A stretch of 64,000 nt of DNA from Utricularia gibba (GCA_002189035.1 CM007989.1:7378001-7442000), one strand, 5' to 3'. Positions 57,201 through 63,347 are shown, numbered from the stretch's first letter. Notes: generated from the letters alone by a model not told the origin. Numbers and translations are program-made.

Positions 57201-57404
57201 GTTTCCTGCTACTAACTACCACTTGCAAAAGGTTGTGGTTTCTGAGCCACAGTCTCCCTCCCTTCAATTATGAAGCCCCATTTATCTGAAGAGAGCCACA
57301 CCACAACACAGGAGGTTTCAGCGTTATGAAACGTAGTGGGGTTCTCTACTTCAGGAGCACTGAGTAACTCACTACCCCTGCTGTGAGCACTCTTGCTTCC
57401 CGCC

Positions 57405-57952
57405 ATGGAATCCACTCTGCTATCTCCTCCTGAGGGCTTCTCCAATCGTTGTTGGAGTGATGACTCATTTGATGATGACTGTGCTTACTCATACATAGAA
57501 ATGGATCCAAGATCGCCTCCCTCGAAGCGGTTCATCCATGTCTCATCCGACTCCTGGTTCAGCTTTCCGCTATCTGGTCATATCAATCCTGATCGGATGC
57601 TCCGGGATGGTCTAATCATACCCACTTTGTCGAGGACAAAGAGGCTGATCACCCTGATGCCTTAAACCACTTCATCTCCTTTCCCTCTTCCACAGCACCA
57701 CTACTGAGTCAGGTCTGCTGCGTGTCGATGAAGAGGATATGGAGGTTTTCCATACGAATCATGCACAGGTTTATGATGAATATGAACTGTGCAAGTATGA
57801 CTGTGATCCAGGATAAGAAGCGGTACCGGAATGCAACCCCGGAGGTCACCGGCATCCGCTGCGAGGCGGCGGTGTCCGACTCCGAGAGCTCCATCAATGA
57901 AGCAGTTCTCCATTGCAAAAGAACTGGGAGTAGTATGATTTCAATGTATTGA
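57405..57952 (+). CDS. MAKR6: Membrane-associated kinase regulator (BKI1/MAKR family, MAKR6-like), split by an apparent 1-nt deletion
   Basis: The 5' ORF has YIEMDPRSPPSKRF...FSFPLS...DGLIIP. A +1 correction at 57621-57628 continues FVEDKE... into the 57722-57952 frame, which ends in ESSINEAVLHCKRT (the MAKR C-terminal AI.HCK motif). Confidence 0.78.
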
Positions 57953-58172
57953 GATTCGTTCATTCTGTGCTCATGATCTCATTGAATGCCATTTCTGATG
58001 TAATGGGTGAACACCAGAGAGTGTAGCCCAGCACTGTAAACGTTGTTTACGTCGACCCAGTATAAAAACGGTGTCGTTCTATACTACTCTAGGACTCTTC
58101 ACAGTCGAAAGTACACTACTGCAAAAACCTTGACAAAACCCTCTCAGGGCTCGAGAGATATCTTCATCAAGC

Positions 58173-59730
58173 TCACGGCGATGGCTTCTCGGCTTCTGTC
58201 GGCGCCGAATCGGCGGTTCCGTTGCGCGAAATCTTGTTCGTCATAGGGGATTGGAAAATTTTCAGGTGCTGCTCCATGTTGGTGGGGATTCTTTCGGAGT
58301 TGTTCCACCAATTCGATTTCGGTTTCCTGTCATTGGAGACGGTTAGGATGTCCGTGTCGTTGGGGAACAGGTCGCGGAAGACGAAGGCGTGGATGATCGT
58401 CGTAATTAGAATCGTCGCAACGCTGAACATCGCTGCCGCGCAGAGAATGAGCGTTAGGACTCTGGTTTCGGTGGTCGGCGCCGCCTCGTAGTATTTGATT
58501 GTAGCCACGGCGGCGCTTGCCGTCGGGACCGTGTACGCCCACCACGCAAGCGAAAACCTGTAAGCATTTGGGAAAAGATGATTGTTAGTGCTATTGTTGA
58601 TTAAAGCTGGTACTGTGTTTATCTCAGATCTGTTGATTACGTACTTGAATCCTCGGAAGAAATCAACGCGAACCGCCTGAAAAGAGACAGCAAAGAAGTT
58701 GGGCTTTGTGAGGTTCAGTTTCATGGTTTCTATGAATCATTGCGCTATGAAATTGGATCACTGACCAGTGATAGATAGAGGAACAGAGCAGTGAAGTATG
58801 CGATTCTTGACCCATTCCCGAAGGAACCTTCAATTTCCGCCCATGCTATTGCTGCTAAGCTCGGAGCGGCAACCAAGAGAAAGAAGACGGGGTGAAGCTC
58901 CTTCCTAAGAGTCTCGTTTGTTGGAAGTCTCTGATAAAGAGTGACGAATACCACTATGTAATGAACCATCCCAACAGCGAAGAAGAAGATTGGAGCCTCT
59001 TTGAGCCCCATTGATGCCCCTAGCCAGGATCCAACGAAGTTTCCCACAACCGCTAGAAGATTTGATGGGTTCCCTGTTTTCGAAAGCCGTCGTTCGCCAC
59101 GCGACATCCATTGCCCGTATAACTTGAGCTCGAGGCCGAGAAGTGGAACCATGAGCAAGTACCAAAGCCAGTGAGGCAGAGACTCCGACATCGAGGGAGG
59201 AAGCCCGAGGCACAAGAAGAGAAGGGATATCCATGGAGCGAAGAAGAAGTTGACACGAATTGGGTGGCAATATTCTTGGCGTACAGCCTCGAAGTACTTG
59301 ATGCTTTTGCAAATGTAGGTTGCGGAGACGATCGAGATCAATAAAACCTCCAGGGCCCAGAAAATGAAACTGATTTCCAAGCGGCCATGGATGAAGTTAG
59401 CAGTGTGTGATGATGCAAGTGACTTCCACATAATGGCTTGCATCCCAACTCCAAGACAGATATCAAACGATGTGATCGGAAATCGTAGCAGAAAAGGCCA
59501 TGTCTCGTCTCCCTGAAGAGCTGCTTTCCCCAAAGCCTGCATTCACAGAGGAAACATCAACACAATATGGTTAGTTCATTTCCCTTCGAAGCATACATAG
59601 ATTCTTGCATGTATTTGCTGTAGATGCACACACAACTTACCGTTGTCCGACGAGCGGCGGCGATTTTAGCCTCTGCAGCGCCAACAGCAGCCGCAGCAGT
59701 GTCATCTATCACGAGTATGATCTTGTCCAT
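58173..59730 (-). CDS. SLAH2/3-type S-type anion channel paralog A (425 aa): divergent pore and short N-terminus
   Basis: Exons 59730-59641 (inferred), 59536-58766, 58676-58645 and 58557-58173, all in frame. Motifs WPFLLRFP, EYCHPIRVNFFFAPW, FVTLYQRLPT, ELHPVFFL, FSLAWWAYT and LFPND. The 771-nt and 32-nt exons match paralog B in size. Confidence 0.92.
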
Positions 59731-60498
59731 ACCAACTCACAACCTAGCGATCGTGGAACGAGCTTAGGAAGTGACTGGCTTTTGTTGTGATGCGATGAGT
59801 TGACAAGAAACCCATTCCACCATTTTATAGCATTACCAGATCCCCGCATTAAATTGGACAGAAGTCATCCTCAAATCAGAGAACACTCTCTGGCAAGCCT
59901 ACTTGGGTATGTTTGCTGTCAGCCGCTGACTTTGCATGTGTCGCTCATTTATTTATTTTCGATTTCACACATTTTTTTTAATTTCCTTTCCGTCTAATAT
60001 GTGATCTTAATTTAAAAGCAACGTGCAGGGAAGTACAACATCCACATGGTTGAATTCAAAGGGTAAAAATCTTTATGTTCAGGTTCAGTCTCCAATATCC
60101 CATGTCTTTTACTAGATGCCATCTACATTTCATCGTTTCCCATTGCATTACTCCAACTATTCAAAATGAGAATTGAGTTATGGAATCTTCTTTCTTAGTG
60201 GTTGCTCCCATGTGTTCATTTAAATACACCAGAAAGGAATGAAGCATGTGCATTTTCCCATCTATGAAAATGAAATGAAATATTTCAAACTAACAGGGAA
60301 ATGGAAGAATGGAAGAAGGCCAGACGAGGGTATTGAACTCTGCACCGGCGCTTTTTCCGACGTGGGATGGCGCGGCGTAGGCATGAAGCGTGGCAAAGCA
60401 GTGGAGACGCACACCAGCACAGGTATAATTACTGGTTATTCGGCAATCGCAACGGGAGTAACTCAACAATGATTAGAAGTGCATTGAAGGGAGTTACC

Positions 60499-60816
60499 CA
60501 CGTGGCACCCGGTGTCGCCGCGAGAGTCGGACACGGATGCGCACGGTATCTGGTGCCAGATTTTCCTCCCTGGACATAGATTTTGCCGTATCCCTCGGTC
60601 ACACCAACCCCATAGTACTTTACTGAGACGGTTTATGATTTTGAATTATCACACACTCAAGATTTAATATCAGTGACCAATTTTATTACACACGTGTCAG
60701 ACAATTGTTAGGAAAAGTAATTGAATGCGATGCTAATAACATTTTTATATGTAAAATAAATTGATTCCATTTCTAAATAGGGCCCACACGGGAGATGGCT
60801 GTTTCCTCCACGTGGC
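60499..60816. promoter_or_regulatory. G-box/ABRE cluster upstream of SLAH paralog A
   Basis: CACGTGGC at 60499-60506, CACGTGTC at 60691-60698 and CACGTGGC at 60809-60816. Confidence 0.5.
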
Positions 60817-61443: not shown

Positions 61444-63347
61444 TTATTTTTGGCCCGCCAGGGATCTCTGAGCATGAAAAGTGTCTTCTTTTCCACATAG
61501 GCTGGAGGCAACAACCCCTTTGTCCGAATTCGGGTCTACTTCGATGCGTGTGACGACCTTTTCCGCCGGCGGGTCGGAGAATTTGAGATACTGCTCGATG
61601 ATGATATCCGCATTTCTCGTTAGCTTGCGAGCCCATCGCCTGGGCCTCTTGTTGCTGATGGCTATGGCGACGTCGTTGGGGAAAAGTCGCCGGAGGACAA
61701 AGGCGTGGATGACGGTCGTCACGAGCAATCCGGCGACGGTGAGTGTCGCCACCGAGCACAGGATCAGCGTCAGCGCCTTCGTCACAAGACTGGGTGCGAC
61801 GTCTGTGTACGTCATTGTGGCGATGGCGGCGCCGGTCATCGGGAATGTGTAAGCCCACCATGCTAATGAGAACCTGTAAAACAGGGGAGAAGTTTGGTGG
61901 TTAGCATCGAAGTGGAAGGGAATGCTAATGAGACGCCGGCGTGTGTTTCAGCTTACTTGAAGCCCCTGAAGAAGTTGACACGGACAACCTGATGCAATGG
62001 AAGAGAACAATGGAGTTAGTTCCATGGATGATTCGTTCAAGAAAATGAAGCTCAGGGGAAGACTAACCAGTGCGAAATAGAGGAACATGGCGATGAAGTA
62101 AGGGATCTGGGAAGCATAGCCGAAGGATCGAGTGATCTCAGCCCAGGCCATGGACGCCACGCTCGGCGCCGCGACGAAGAGGAAGAAGACGGGGTGAAGC
62201 TCCCTGGGCAGAGTCTGGGTTGTGGGAAGCCGTTGATACAGAGTGACAAACAGGACGGTGTAGTGAGCTAACCCGACGGCGAAAAAGAAGATGGGTCCTT
62301 CCCGGAGTTGCATTGATGCTCCAAGCAACGCTCCGACGAAGTTCCCGACAATGGCAAGATGGTTGGAGGGGTTGGCGATCTTGGAAAGCCGGCGATCCCC
62401 ACCGGACATCCAGTCTCCATAGATCTTAAGCTCGAGGCATAGGAAGGGGGCCATGAGCAGGTACCAGATGAAGGGAGGCAGAGCTTTGGAGATCAATGGT
62501 GGATGTCCAAGGCATAGGAAGAGAAGGGCGATCCATGGGGCGAAGAAGAAATTGACTCGAACTGGGTGGTGATATTCACGGCGGACGGCTTCGAAATAGA
62601 AGACCATCTTGAGAATGTATGTGGAGGACACAATCAAGACCAGAACAACGGCGGCGAGCCAGATTATGAGGTTGATCAGAGGACTGACATGGAGGTATTG
62701 TGTGGAGGGCGAGGATGCGAGGCTTTTCCACATGATGGCTTGGCTTCCAACTCCGAGACAAATACCAAAGGATGAGATGGGGAAACGCAGAAGAAACGGC
62801 CATTTCTTGTCCTTTGGGAGGACTGTTTCCTCTGCAGGCTGCAGTGGAAAAAAAAAACCAATGGTTATTATCAAATTCTAGTGCACCCCACTGAAATCGC
62901 AGGGTATATGATTATACCTTGAGGGTTTCAAGCTCAGGTCCTTCCAAGGCATCCAAATATCGTTTTACGGGTAAAGTTTCAGGGGCCGGAAACTGAACTT
63001 GGTGCTCGATCTCCGATGGGTTGCCACGGAAATTGGATAACTGTCTATGAAACGTTCCGGGGTGGGTTCTGAAAGGTTCATAACTCTTCATCTCATCAAG
63101 CGTTGACTGAGGATCAGCTTCGGGTGGAGGTGGTGGCATGCTGATGGAAACAAATGGTTCTCCCTGTGCCGCGGATGCATTCTTCTCCTTTTCCACCTGA
63201 GATCAATCAAACTGTAAGGAAACTACTATGTTCAGTTGTTCAACTACAAAAATGGTAACTTCTTACAATTGGGATTCTTGCAGCCTCATCAGTGACAACG
63301 CTCACCGAAACCAGCTCCCCAAGAACGGAATCCTGGATGTTCTCCAT
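61444..63347 (-). CDS. SLAH3: SLAH2/3-type S-type anion channel paralog B (530 aa), canonical pore
   Basis: Exons 63347-63267, 63196-62918, 62838-62068, 61988-61957 and 61873-61444. The N-terminal FRT...RQLSNFRG and LPVKRYLDALEGPELETLK motifs are typical of SLAH2/3. Pore motifs SFGICLG, NPSNHLAIVGNF and WWAYTFPMTG are intact. SLAH2 versus SLAH3 orthology is not resolved. Confidence 0.94.

What the first reader, a model, noticed from the sequence alone, without database searches (positions are those of the whole stretch)
58173..59536. SLAH paralog with a rebuilt pore: Phe gate lost and Gly-to-Asp at the slac1-2 position
Seen, comparing paralog A with canonical neighbour B: TM1 SFGICLG becomes SFDICLG (GAT at 59464-59462; GGT in B). 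TM9 WWAYTFPMTG becomes WWAYTVPTAS (GTC at 58529-58527; TTC in B). TM5 NPSNHL becomes NPSNLL (59059-59057). Other changes are GSQA to GMQA, VGALL to VGSWL, FLFVAAPS to FLLVAAPS and VASMAW to LAAIAW. These fall in the odd, pore-lining helices, while the ORF, introns and loop motifs are intact. Established: AtSLAC1 F450 (SLAH3 F517, TehA F262) is the gate and small substitutions open the channel; G194D (slac1-2, TehA G15D) sits beside it and blocks conduction. My residue counts reproduce the known spacing to SLAH3 H330, H454 and F517. Inference: A naturally combines the gate-opening and pore-blocking changes, adding an acid and removing a His in an anion pore. It may be a channel with new selectivity or gating, or a non-conducting subunit. 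I know of no described natural SLAH like this.
Basis: partly seen in the sequence, partly recalled or inferred. Interest (0 to 1): 0.88.

Follow-up and report, generated by a model that had tools for sequence, protein, structure and literature searches.

The report
Old SLAH anion-channel paralog, altered pore
One of two neighbouring plant anion-channel genes has lost the channel's otherwise universal gate residue and gained an acid at the pore entrance; it was kept by selection for a very long time, but today only RNA from the opposite strand is seen over it.

Summary
Gene A (minus strand, 58173-59730) is an intact SLAH2/3-type gene. It has Asp at the SLAC1-G194 site, Val at the gate Phe (SLAC1 F450 / SLAH3 F517) and Leu at SLAH3-H399. 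RNA-derived contigs from two studies confirm these bases.

A is not a young pseudogene:
- A and B differ at saturated synonymous sites.
- A branches off before B separates from its Genlisea relatives.
- A branch codon model gives omega 0.10 on A's branch, equal to background. Omega = 1 is rejected.

- The substitutions are not concentrated in pore helices.
- The lost His is not a known pH sensor.
- Other natural SLAHs without the gate Phe exist. One is a conserved clade in carnivorous Caryophyllales with Ser plus Val at the same two sites. SLAH1/4 carry Arg at the Gly site.
- Every splice junction seen over A belongs to a plus-strand antisense transcript. B is spliced in sense in the same runs.
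- Differences between two haplotypes of A look neutral (6 nonsynonymous to 3 synonymous).

Best reading: a long-maintained SLAH with no regulatory N-terminus and a remodelled pore, probably a poorly conducting or modulatory protomer. It may now be silenced. This is a new variant of a known kind. The scan had separately noted A's replaced N-terminus on this window (s1-192913).

The parts
59641..59730 (-). Putative exon 1 of gene A (30 codons, ATG at 59730-59728). It has no homology to the SLAH N-terminal regulatory region.
   Evidence: Open frame and a GTAAGT donor. No RNA junction supports it. No remnant of B's N-terminal exon lies between A and B. An in-frame ATG at 59542, just upstream of the exon-2 acceptor, is an alternative start.
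58766..59536 (-). Exon 2 of A (257 codons, TM1-TM8). It holds D55 (GAT 59464-59462) and L190 (CTT 59059-59057).
   Evidence: Pfam PF03595, E = 2e-32. Gapless alignment to AtSLAH3 9m7r residues 245-496 and to AtSLAC1. Bases confirmed in X1-X5 contigs.
58645..58676 (-). Exon 3 of A (32 nt, AVRVDFFRGFK)
   Evidence: Same length and phase as B's exon 61988-61957.
58173..58557 (-). Exon 4 of A (TM9-TM10 and C-terminal tail). It holds V308 (GTC 58529-58527); stop at 58175-58173.
   Evidence: Aligns to SLAH3 508-616 and SLAC1 441-512, with V at F517/F450.
61444..63347 (-). Gene B, the canonical SLAH2/3-type neighbour (5 exons, 530 aa). It keeps G, H and F.
   Evidence: Model. Sense junctions (CT..AC on the plus strand) at 61874-61956, 61989-62067 and 62839-62917 in runs X2, X5 and X9.
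57955..60668 (+). Spliced antisense transcript covering all of A. Exons about 57955-58559, 58628-59905, 60028-60083 and 60298 to about 60668. It runs on from the plus-strand gene at 57405-57952.
   Evidence: All joints are GT..AG on the plus strand, and A's own introns are retained. There is no long plus-strand ORF.
57405..57952 (+). Convergent neighbour gene. From memory its product looks like a membrane-associated kinase regulator (182 aa). It is the probable source of the read-through antisense RNA.
   Evidence: RNA contigs X2 and X4 cover 57304-57970. The ORF is continuous only with the extra C seen in RNA after 57620.

Best explanation
Gene A is a genuine, anciently duplicated paralog of the SLAH2/3-type S-type anion channel next to it. 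Purifying selection of normal strength kept it for nearly all of its history.

It encodes only the ten-helix channel body. The cytosolic N-terminal regulatory region, which carries the kinase sites and the plug, is gone. The central gate Phe is replaced by Val. An Asp sits where SLAC1 has G194, one of the three residues that ring the cytosolic entry of the conducting pore.

The most likely mechanism:
- A still folds and trimerises. It keeps the residues that the cryo-EM paper lists at SLAH protomer interfaces and three of the four key pore residues.
- It cannot be gated by kinases in the SLAC1/SLAH3 manner.
- Its own pore is a poor anion conductor, because an acidic side chain narrows and repels at the entry.
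- It therefore acts mainly as a modifying protomer in mixed trimers with a canonical SLAH such as B, much as SLAH1 does with SLAH3. It reached this state independently, from SLAH2/3 stock.

What is shown: the sequence state, the residue equivalences, the age, the selection and the loss of the N-terminus. What is inferred: folding, assembly, low conductance and the partner role.

Its present activity is doubtful. In the seven RNA data sets examined, only a spliced antisense read-through transcript covers the gene.
For: - The ORF and splice signals are intact and match B's gene structure.
- Residue equivalences come from gapless alignments to solved SLAH3 and SLAC1.
- The duplication is old. Pairwise dS is 1.6, and the tree is (A,(B,(Genlisea1,Genlisea2))) with support 93/88 and 96/96.
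- A branch codon model gives omega_A = 0.10, equal to background. Omega_A = 1 is rejected with 2dlnL = 55-71 in four topologies.
- A neutral phase of 0.09 substitutions per site would leave the frame open with probability 0.016.
- Odd helices are still less changed than even ones (22.5% against 38.8%, p = 0.008).
- A keeps F336, F346, V403, H330 and H454 (SLAH3 numbering). It also keeps 7 of 8 SLAH3 residues named at SLAH1-SLAH3 interfaces; one of the seven is K483, which reads Arg in A as in the family consensus (PMC12808693).
- G194 lines the entry of pore P1 together with F266 and S447 (PMC10645844).
- SLAH1/4 naturally place a charged Arg at this position, and it controls permeation (PMC12808693).
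- An independent, conserved clade in carnivorous Caryophyllales also substitutes the Gly site and has Val at the gate. This shows that the combination can be maintained by selection.
- No N-terminal regulatory exon remains.
Against: - No sense splice junction of A appears in X1-X5, X8 or X9. Every junction over A is GT..AG on the plus strand. B's sense junctions are seen in the same runs at depths as low as 3.
- Differences between the window and the X5 haplotype in A's membrane domain are 6 nonsynonymous to 3 synonymous. That fits neutrality, and has P = 0.007 under omega 0.1. B shows 0 to 4.
- A deviates at 33 of 206 near-invariant columns, twice its relatives' rate.
- From my own knowledge (Chen et al. 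2010, not held in the library), G194D in SLAC1 is a loss-of-function allele.
- No ortholog of A was found in 5.8 billion proteins, so the age of D55 and V308 is unknown.
- No structure model or current measurement was made.
Confidence: 0.45

Rival explanations
1. A is an incipient pseudogene. It was a working channel gene for most of its history, but has recently been silenced, perhaps by read-through antisense transcription from the convergent neighbour. It now drifts. The frame is still open only because too little time has passed.
For: - Only antisense-spliced RNA covers A, with A's introns retained, while B is spliced in sense.
- Haplotype differences in A's membrane domain are 6 nonsynonymous to 3 synonymous. 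This is compatible with neutrality (P = 0.84) and unlikely at omega 0.1 (P = 0.007). B shows 0 to 4.
- Up to about 0.02 neutral substitutions per site would leave the frame open with probability about 0.4.
- The D55 equivalent is a known loss-of-function change in SLAC1 (own knowledge).
- GC3 is lower than in B, 0.59 against 0.69.
Against: - There is no stop, frameshift or broken splice site.
- Omega on the whole A branch is 0.10, so nearly all of A's 33 unusual substitutions were fixed under constraint.
- Polymorphism normally carries an excess of mildly harmful changes. The counts are small: Fisher test of A against B, p = 0.07.
- Assembled contigs drop rare variants, and only seven RNA runs were examined.
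Confidence: 0.33
2. A is an ordinary working anion channel. In this fast-evolving lineage the Asp and Val are tolerated or compensate each other, and A conducts nitrate or chloride much like other SLAHs, only without kinase control.
For: - Long-term omega is 0.10.
- Three of four key pore residues are kept.
- Phe-to-Ala effects on SLAC1 and SLAH3 are modest and depend on context. F517A does not change selectivity (PMC9076830, PMC10645844, PMC12808693).
- Natural Val, Ser, Leu or Tyr at the gate occurs in about 9% of database sequences.
- Gly plus Phe and Asp plus Val have nearly equal summed side-chain volume (own arithmetic, an inference).
Against: - An acidic residue at the pore entry is unique among about 315 sequences.
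- It copies a known null allele (own knowledge).
- The N-terminal region needed for activation of SLAC1/SLAH3 is missing.
- No sense expression is seen.
Confidence: 0.15
3. Assembly or annotation artefact: the unusual codons are sequencing errors, or the gene model is wrong.
For: The assembly has at least one single-base error or polymorphism nearby, an extra C after 57620 in RNA. Exon 1 has no RNA support.
Against: The three codons are identical in contigs from two independent studies and two haplotypes. DNA runs from 2013 and 2019 hold the locus. The membrane-domain exons align without gaps to solved channels.
Confidence: 0.02

Closest known systems
AtSLAH3 / AtSLAH2 (S-type anion channels; PDB 9m7r)
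   Same: Best structural-sequence match (360 bits for exon 2, gapless). A nests phylogenetically inside the Lamiales SLAH2/3 clade. It shares the exon structure of B. It keeps H330, H454, F336, F346, V403 and the interface residues.
   Different: A lacks the N-terminal regulatory region. [quoted passage not shown] It has Asp instead of G264 and Leu instead of H399.
AtSLAH1 / SLAH4 (short modulatory subunits that form mixed trimers with SLAH3; PDB 9m7s chain C)
   Same: Short N-terminus. A charged side chain sits at the Gly position (R47 in SLAH1) and projects into the permeation path (PMC12808693). The proposed partner-subunit role is the same.
   Different: A is not a member of that clade: 157 bits to SLAH1 against 360 to SLAH3. 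The charge is negative, not positive. SLAH1 keeps the gate Phe (F307) and A does not.
Arabidopsis slac1-2 (G194D) and TehA G15D / F262 mutants (PDB 3m73-3m78)
   Same: D55 is exactly the G194D change by alignment. V308 corresponds to the engineered small-residue replacements of the gate Phe.
   Different: Those are induced or engineered single changes in otherwise canonical channels. A is a natural gene carrying both, plus about 30 other changes, and was kept under selection. The effects of G194D and G15D are cited from my own knowledge; the paper was not held.
Ser/Val SLAH clade of carnivorous Caryophyllales (Nepenthes P0386, Drosera P0387, Dionaea P0388, Ancistrocladus P0322); I found no held paper describing it
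   Same: These are SLAH2/3-derived paralogs with the Gly site substituted and Val at the gate. A shares 6 of the clade's 14 deviating invariant sites: 55, 178, 201, 257, 308 and 312.
   Different: Independent origin: the clade lies within Caryophyllales (100/100) and A lies with B and Genlisea (96/96). They have Ser, not Asp. They also change F346 and V403, which A keeps. Most keep a long N-terminus of 164-173 residues. The overlap is not significant once the two sites that led me to the clade are removed (p = 0.09).

Membership tests
SLAC1/SLAH S-type anion channel family (Pfam PF03595) | PF03595 domain above the curated threshold | tested here: met
   Exon 2 alone scores 113 bits against a cut-off of 27.9, E = 2e-32.
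SLAC1/SLAH S-type anion channel family (Pfam PF03595) | Ten-helix body that aligns with solved SLAC1/SLAH3 structures | tested here: met
   Gapless alignment to SLAH3 245-496 and 508-616, and to SLAC1 176-429 and 441-512. No 3D model was made.
SLAC1/SLAH S-type anion channel family (Pfam PF03595) | Central gate Phe (SLAC1 F450 / SLAH3 F517 / TehA F262) | tested here: not met
   Val at residue 308, GTC 58529-58527. Confirmed in RNA contigs.
SLAC1/SLAH S-type anion channel family (Pfam PF03595) | Anion conductance | not testable with these tools
   Needs electrophysiology.
SLAC1 / SLAH2 / SLAH3 subtype (kinase-gated) | Cytosolic N-terminal regulatory region with the conserved Y(F/L)DALEGPEL(D/E)TL motif and phosphorylation sites | tested here: not met
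   B has the motif and A does not. tblastn of B's and Sesamum's N-termini finds nothing between A and B.
SLAC1 / SLAH2 / SLAH3 subtype (kinase-gated) | Gly at SLAC1-194 lining the pore entry | tested here: not met
   Asp at residue 55. G in 119 of 121 homologs including B. No Asp or Glu in about 315 sequences.
SLAC1 / SLAH2 / SLAH3 subtype (kinase-gated) | Phylogenetic placement in the SLAH2/3 clade | tested here: met
   A nests with B and Genlisea inside Lamiales SLAH2/3. The long-branch caveat applies.
SLAH1/SLAH4 modulatory subunits | Membership of the SLAH1/4 clade with the R47 / Y123 signature | tested here: not met
   157 bits to SLAH1 against 360 to SLAH3. A has D55 and F127 instead of Arg and Tyr.
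SLAH1/SLAH4 modulatory subunits | Forms mixed trimers with SLAH3 and alters its currents | not testable with these tools
   There is only indirect support: 7 of 8 named interface residues are kept, counting K483, which reads Arg in A as in the family consensus.
Unprocessed pseudogene | Disabling mutation (stop, frameshift or broken splice site) | tested here: not met
   Open 425-codon frame with canonical splice sites.
Unprocessed pseudogene | Neutral evolution (omega near 1) | tested here: not met
   Omega_A is 0.10, and omega = 1 is rejected with 2dlnL = 55-71. However, recent haplotype differences are 6 nonsynonymous to 3 synonymous.
Unprocessed pseudogene | No sense transcript | tested here: inconclusive
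   No sense junction appears in 7 RNA runs, while B's are seen. Contigs drop rare variants, and the tissues are unknown.
cis-natural antisense transcript (the plus-strand RNA over A) | Transcript from the opposite strand overlapping the gene, with strand fixed by splice-site orientation | tested here: met
   Four GT..AG introns on the plus strand. B's introns read CT..AC in the same output.

The most novel reading that the evidence does not exclude
Phe-less SLAH channels with a substituted G194 site may be a recurrent, selected design, not decay. They arose independently in two carnivorous lineages: the Ser/Val clade of Nepenthes, Drosera, Dionaea and Ancistrocladus, and gene A in a Lentibulariaceae-like plant. 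On this reading, A is a working, kinase-independent pore or protomer with an acid-lined entry, used for trap or gland ion and water transport, and expressed only in cells or conditions that the available RNA does not sample.
Probability: 0.12. Interest if true: 0.85.

Novelty: new variant of a known kind. Interest (0 to 1): 0.6.

Why it matters
The gate Phe is described as the one residue conserved across the whole SLAC/SLAH family, and Gly-194-to-Asp is a classic null allele.

Gene A carries both changes, yet shows ordinary purifying selection over a very long branch. It is therefore a natural experiment on what an S-type channel body can do without its gate, without its regulatory N-terminus, and with a negative charge at the pore entry. 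If it works, it would be a second, independently evolved kind of modifying subunit beside SLAH1/4, or a channel with altered selectivity.

The Ser/Val clade found in passing in carnivorous Caryophyllales makes the question directly testable in more than one species.

If A instead proves to be freshly silenced, the locus is a dated example of gene loss beginning with antisense read-through rather than with a disabling mutation.

Tried and rejected
- **Orthologs of A.** Two word-index searches (full length and exon 2) and one exhaustive search of cluster representatives found nothing closer than 64-69% identity. D55 and V308 therefore could not be dated.
- **Remnant of the N-terminal exon upstream of A.** None found.
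- **Synteny with the WD40/CTLH gene** that follows the SLAH gene in Salvia and Genlisea. It is absent from the window.
- **Pore-helix enrichment of A's substitutions.** Rejected.
- **Genlisea copies as one-to-one orthologs of A and B.** Rejected: those topologies are worse by 40 lnL units.
- **Relaxed selection as the cause of A's long branch.** Rejected: dS is long too, and omega equals background.
- **Convergence with the Ser/Val clade as a statistical claim.** p = 0.0125 falls to 0.09 once sites 55 and 308, which led me to the clade, are left out.
- **Literature.** Chen et al. 2010 is not held, and 'G194D' gives no SLAC1 paper. Statements about G194D and G15D therefore rest on my own knowledge. 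No held paper on SLAH in Utricularia or on Phe-less SLAHs was found.
- **Structure prediction of A.** Not run. The spliced protein has no single reference, and I did not retype it. I had typed it once.
- **Depth differences between X5 contigs.** Not interpreted.

Full report
**What is there.** The window is plant DNA with very short introns. Two SLAH genes lie in tandem on the minus strand.
- Gene A is modelled as four exons (59730-59641, 59536-58766, 58676-58645, 58557-58173). It gives an open frame of 425 codons with canonical splice signals.
- Gene B (63347-61444, five exons, 530 aa) has introns at the same positions and phases.
- Both match Pfam PF03595.
- B carries an N-terminal exon with the conserved YLDALEGPELETL motif. 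A has instead a 30-codon exon with no homology. tblastn finds no trace of the regulatory exon between the two genes. This agrees with the separate first-stage note s1-192913.
- An in-frame ATG at 59542 could also serve as the start.

**The observation.** Gapless alignments to solved structures fix the equivalences:
- D55 = AtSLAC1 G194 = AtSLAH3 G264.
- V308 = SLAC1 F450 = SLAH3 F517.
- L190 = SLAH3 H399. This is not one of the pH-sensing histidines. H330 and H454 are kept in A as H121 and H245.
- A also keeps SLAH3 F336, F346 and V403, three of the four pore residues named in PMC12808693.

Among 120 SLAH2/3 homologs plus B (121 sequences), the three columns read G in 119, H in 120 and F in 118. 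RNA-derived contigs from two studies (X1-X4, and X5, which is a different haplotype) show no difference at the three codons. DNA runs of the same organism from 2013 and 2019 hold 65-86% of the locus words. The bases are therefore real.

**Is the pore specifically 'rebuilt'?** No.
- A deviates at 33 of about 206 columns that are at least 95% invariant in other angiosperms. B deviates at 17-18, and the other homologs average 1.8.
- The deviations are spread evenly: 14.8% of invariant columns in odd helices, 14.8% in even helices and 19.3% in loops (helix limits are my approximation).
- Over all columns the odd helices remain the better conserved, 22.5% changed against 38.8% (p = 0.008). That is the normal pattern of constraint.
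- The two Genlisea aurea SLAH2/3 proteins are B's closest relatives at 70.7% identity. They also deviate at 8-11% of these columns.
- So the whole lineage evolves fast, and A is about twice its relatives. I infer that the organism is a member of Lentibulariaceae with a genome of about 100 Mb.

**Age and selection.**
- A and B are 66% identical in the channel body. Pairwise dS is 1.6 (saturated), dN is 0.225 and dN/dS is 0.14.
- Trees place A and B inside the Lamiales SLAH2/3 clade, with topology (A,(B,(Genlisea1,Genlisea2))) and support of 93/88 and 96/96. The duplication therefore predates the split from Genlisea, subject to the long-branch caveat.
- I wrote a GY94-F3x4 branch model and fitted it to 312 codons from seven genes: A, B, two from Genlisea, two from Salvia and one from Handroanthus. 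Omega on A's terminal branch is 0.10, identical to the background of 0.10.
- Fixing omega_A at 1 costs 2dlnL = 61 (p = 5e-15), and 55-71 under three alternative topologies.
- A's long protein branch is matched by a long synonymous branch (dS about 1.5, dN 0.154). This is not relaxed constraint.
- A neutral phase long enough to explain even half of A's extra changes (0.09 substitutions per site) would leave the frame open with probability 0.016.
- A was therefore a selected protein-coding gene for nearly all of its history. The 'young pseudogene' refutation fails.

**Present-day activity.** Here the evidence points the other way.
- Logan contigs of RNA runs cover the whole of A. Every junction over the locus is GT..AG on the plus strand: 58560-58627, 59906-60027, 60084-60297 and a minor 59569-59668.
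- A's own three introns are retained in these contigs.
- In the same output, B's introns appear as CT..AC at exactly the modelled positions, at depths of 3-11, in X2, X5 and X9. The strand call is therefore sound, and sense mRNA of a neighbour is detectable.
- The antisense RNA runs on from a convergent plus-strand gene at 57405-57952. It ends near 60668 and has no long ORF.
- In X8 and X9, A is not covered at all.
- Contigs drop rare variants and the tissues are unknown. This is absence of evidence, but it is consistent across seven runs and three studies.
- The X5 haplotype differs from the window at 10 coding sites in A. In the membrane domain, 6 are nonsynonymous and 3 synonymous. That fits neutrality (P = 0.84) and is unlikely at omega 0.1 (P = 0.007).
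- B's membrane domain shows 0 nonsynonymous to 4 synonymous. Fisher test of A against B gives p = 0.07.
- The numbers are small, but they hint at recent relaxation.

**Comparison with what is known.**
[quoted passage not shown] It also shows that SLAH1/4 carry Arg (R47) where SLAC1, SLAH2 and SLAH3 have this Gly. R47 projects into the path, and R47A abolishes currents.
- My alignment of cluster representatives shows the same R/H at that column in the SLAH1/4-like group.
- PMC10645844 places G194, together with F266 and S447, around the entry of conducting pore P1.
- The effects of replacing the gate Phe depend on context (PMC9076830, PMC10645844).
- That G194D and TehA G15D abolish conduction is from my own knowledge. 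The paper is not held.
- A charged residue at this position in a short, modulatory SLAH therefore has a precedent. A negative charge does not: no Asp or Glu occurs among about 315 sequences.

**Other natural Phe-less SLAHs.** About 9% of database sequences that cover the site lack Phe: Tyr 9, Ser 5, Val 3, Leu 2, Cys 1.
- Some are young tandem or lineage-specific copies. Salvia divinorum P0116 has G to S plus F to C and lies 3.3 kb downstream of canonical P0029. Handroanthus P0053 has Leu and Artemisia P0088 has Val.
- The most striking case is a monophyletic clade (100/100) in Nepenthes, Drosera, Dionaea and Ancistrocladus. It carries Ser at the Gly site and Val at the gate, with further changes at SLAH3 F346 and V403. 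The canonical paralogs of the same species keep G and F.
- A is not related to that clade by descent.
- A shares 6 of the clade's 14 deviating invariant sites (p = 0.0125). This falls to p = 0.09 once the two sites through which I found the clade are excluded.
- I found no held paper describing these proteins.

**Verdict.**
- The sequence observation is confirmed.
A is a long-selected SLAH with no regulatory N-terminus, no gate Phe and a uniquely acidic pore entry.
- The best mechanistic reading is a kinase-independent, poorly conducting or modulatory protomer, analogous to SLAH1 but derived from SLAH2/3 (confidence 0.45).
- A strong rival is that the gene has recently been silenced by antisense read-through and is starting to drift (0.33).
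- A weaker rival is an ordinary conducting channel (0.15).
- The claims of pore-targeted substitution and of uniqueness among natural SLAHs are not supported.
- I class it as a new variant of a known kind.

Noticed in passing
proteins P0386, P0387, P0388, P0322 (no window coordinates): A monophyletic clade of SLAH2/3-derived paralogs in Nepenthes gracilis, Drosera capensis, Dionaea muscipula and Ancistrocladus abbreviatus. It carries Ser at SLAC1-G194, Val at the gate Phe, Leu/Gln at SLAH3-F346, Thr/Ala/Ser at SLAH3-V403, and AA to VP in TM7. Canonical paralogs of the same species keep the usual residues. I found no paper describing it.
   Followed up: partly
window 57955-60668 (+): A spliced plus-strand transcript with no long ORF covers the whole of gene A in antisense. 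It appears to be a read-through of the convergent gene at 57405-57952. Its introns are 58560-58627, 59906-60027 and 60084-60297, with alternatives at 59569-59668 and 60421-60487.
   Followed up: partly
window 57405-57952 (+), position 57620: A 182-aa ORF whose termini recall membrane-associated kinase regulators (from memory, not tested). It is continuous only if a C is added after 57620. RNA contigs of X2 and X4 carry that C, so the assembly has a one-base deletion or the sequenced individual a frameshift allele.
   Followed up: partly
window 59286-59368 (-), codons 87-114 of A: Five of the six nonsynonymous differences between the window and the X5 haplotype cluster within 84 bases (F87L, I88T, A91V, T103A, A114G) in the second helix. 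Coding divergence (10 in 1278 nt) exceeds that of the flanking non-coding sequence, about 3 in 850 nt by my count.
   Followed up: no
window 62203-62271 (-), inside B's large exon: Run X5 shows an extra minus-strand junction that removes 69 bases (23 codons, in frame) from B's membrane domain. This is a possible alternative isoform of B.
   Followed up: no
L001:4718-6682 and L001:10001-12365: Salvia divinorum has a tandem SLAH pair. The downstream copy (P0116) has G to S and F to C and a terminal branch several-fold longer than its canonical partner P0029 (0.072 against 0.020). This is an independent, young parallel to the A/B pair.
   Followed up: partly
proteins P0319, P0331, P0345, P0171, P0445: A group of SLAH-like proteins (one from Paspalum, others unnamed) and one Ancistrocladus paralog carry Ser at the gate-Phe position with the Gly site intact.
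   Followed up: no
window 61444-63347 (gene B), with P0311 and P0315: B and both Genlisea aurea SLAH2/3 proteins deviate at 8-11% of columns that are at least 95% invariant in other angiosperms, and B's N-terminus is only 120 residues. This is a lineage-wide acceleration that must be subtracted before calling A unusual.
   Followed up: yes
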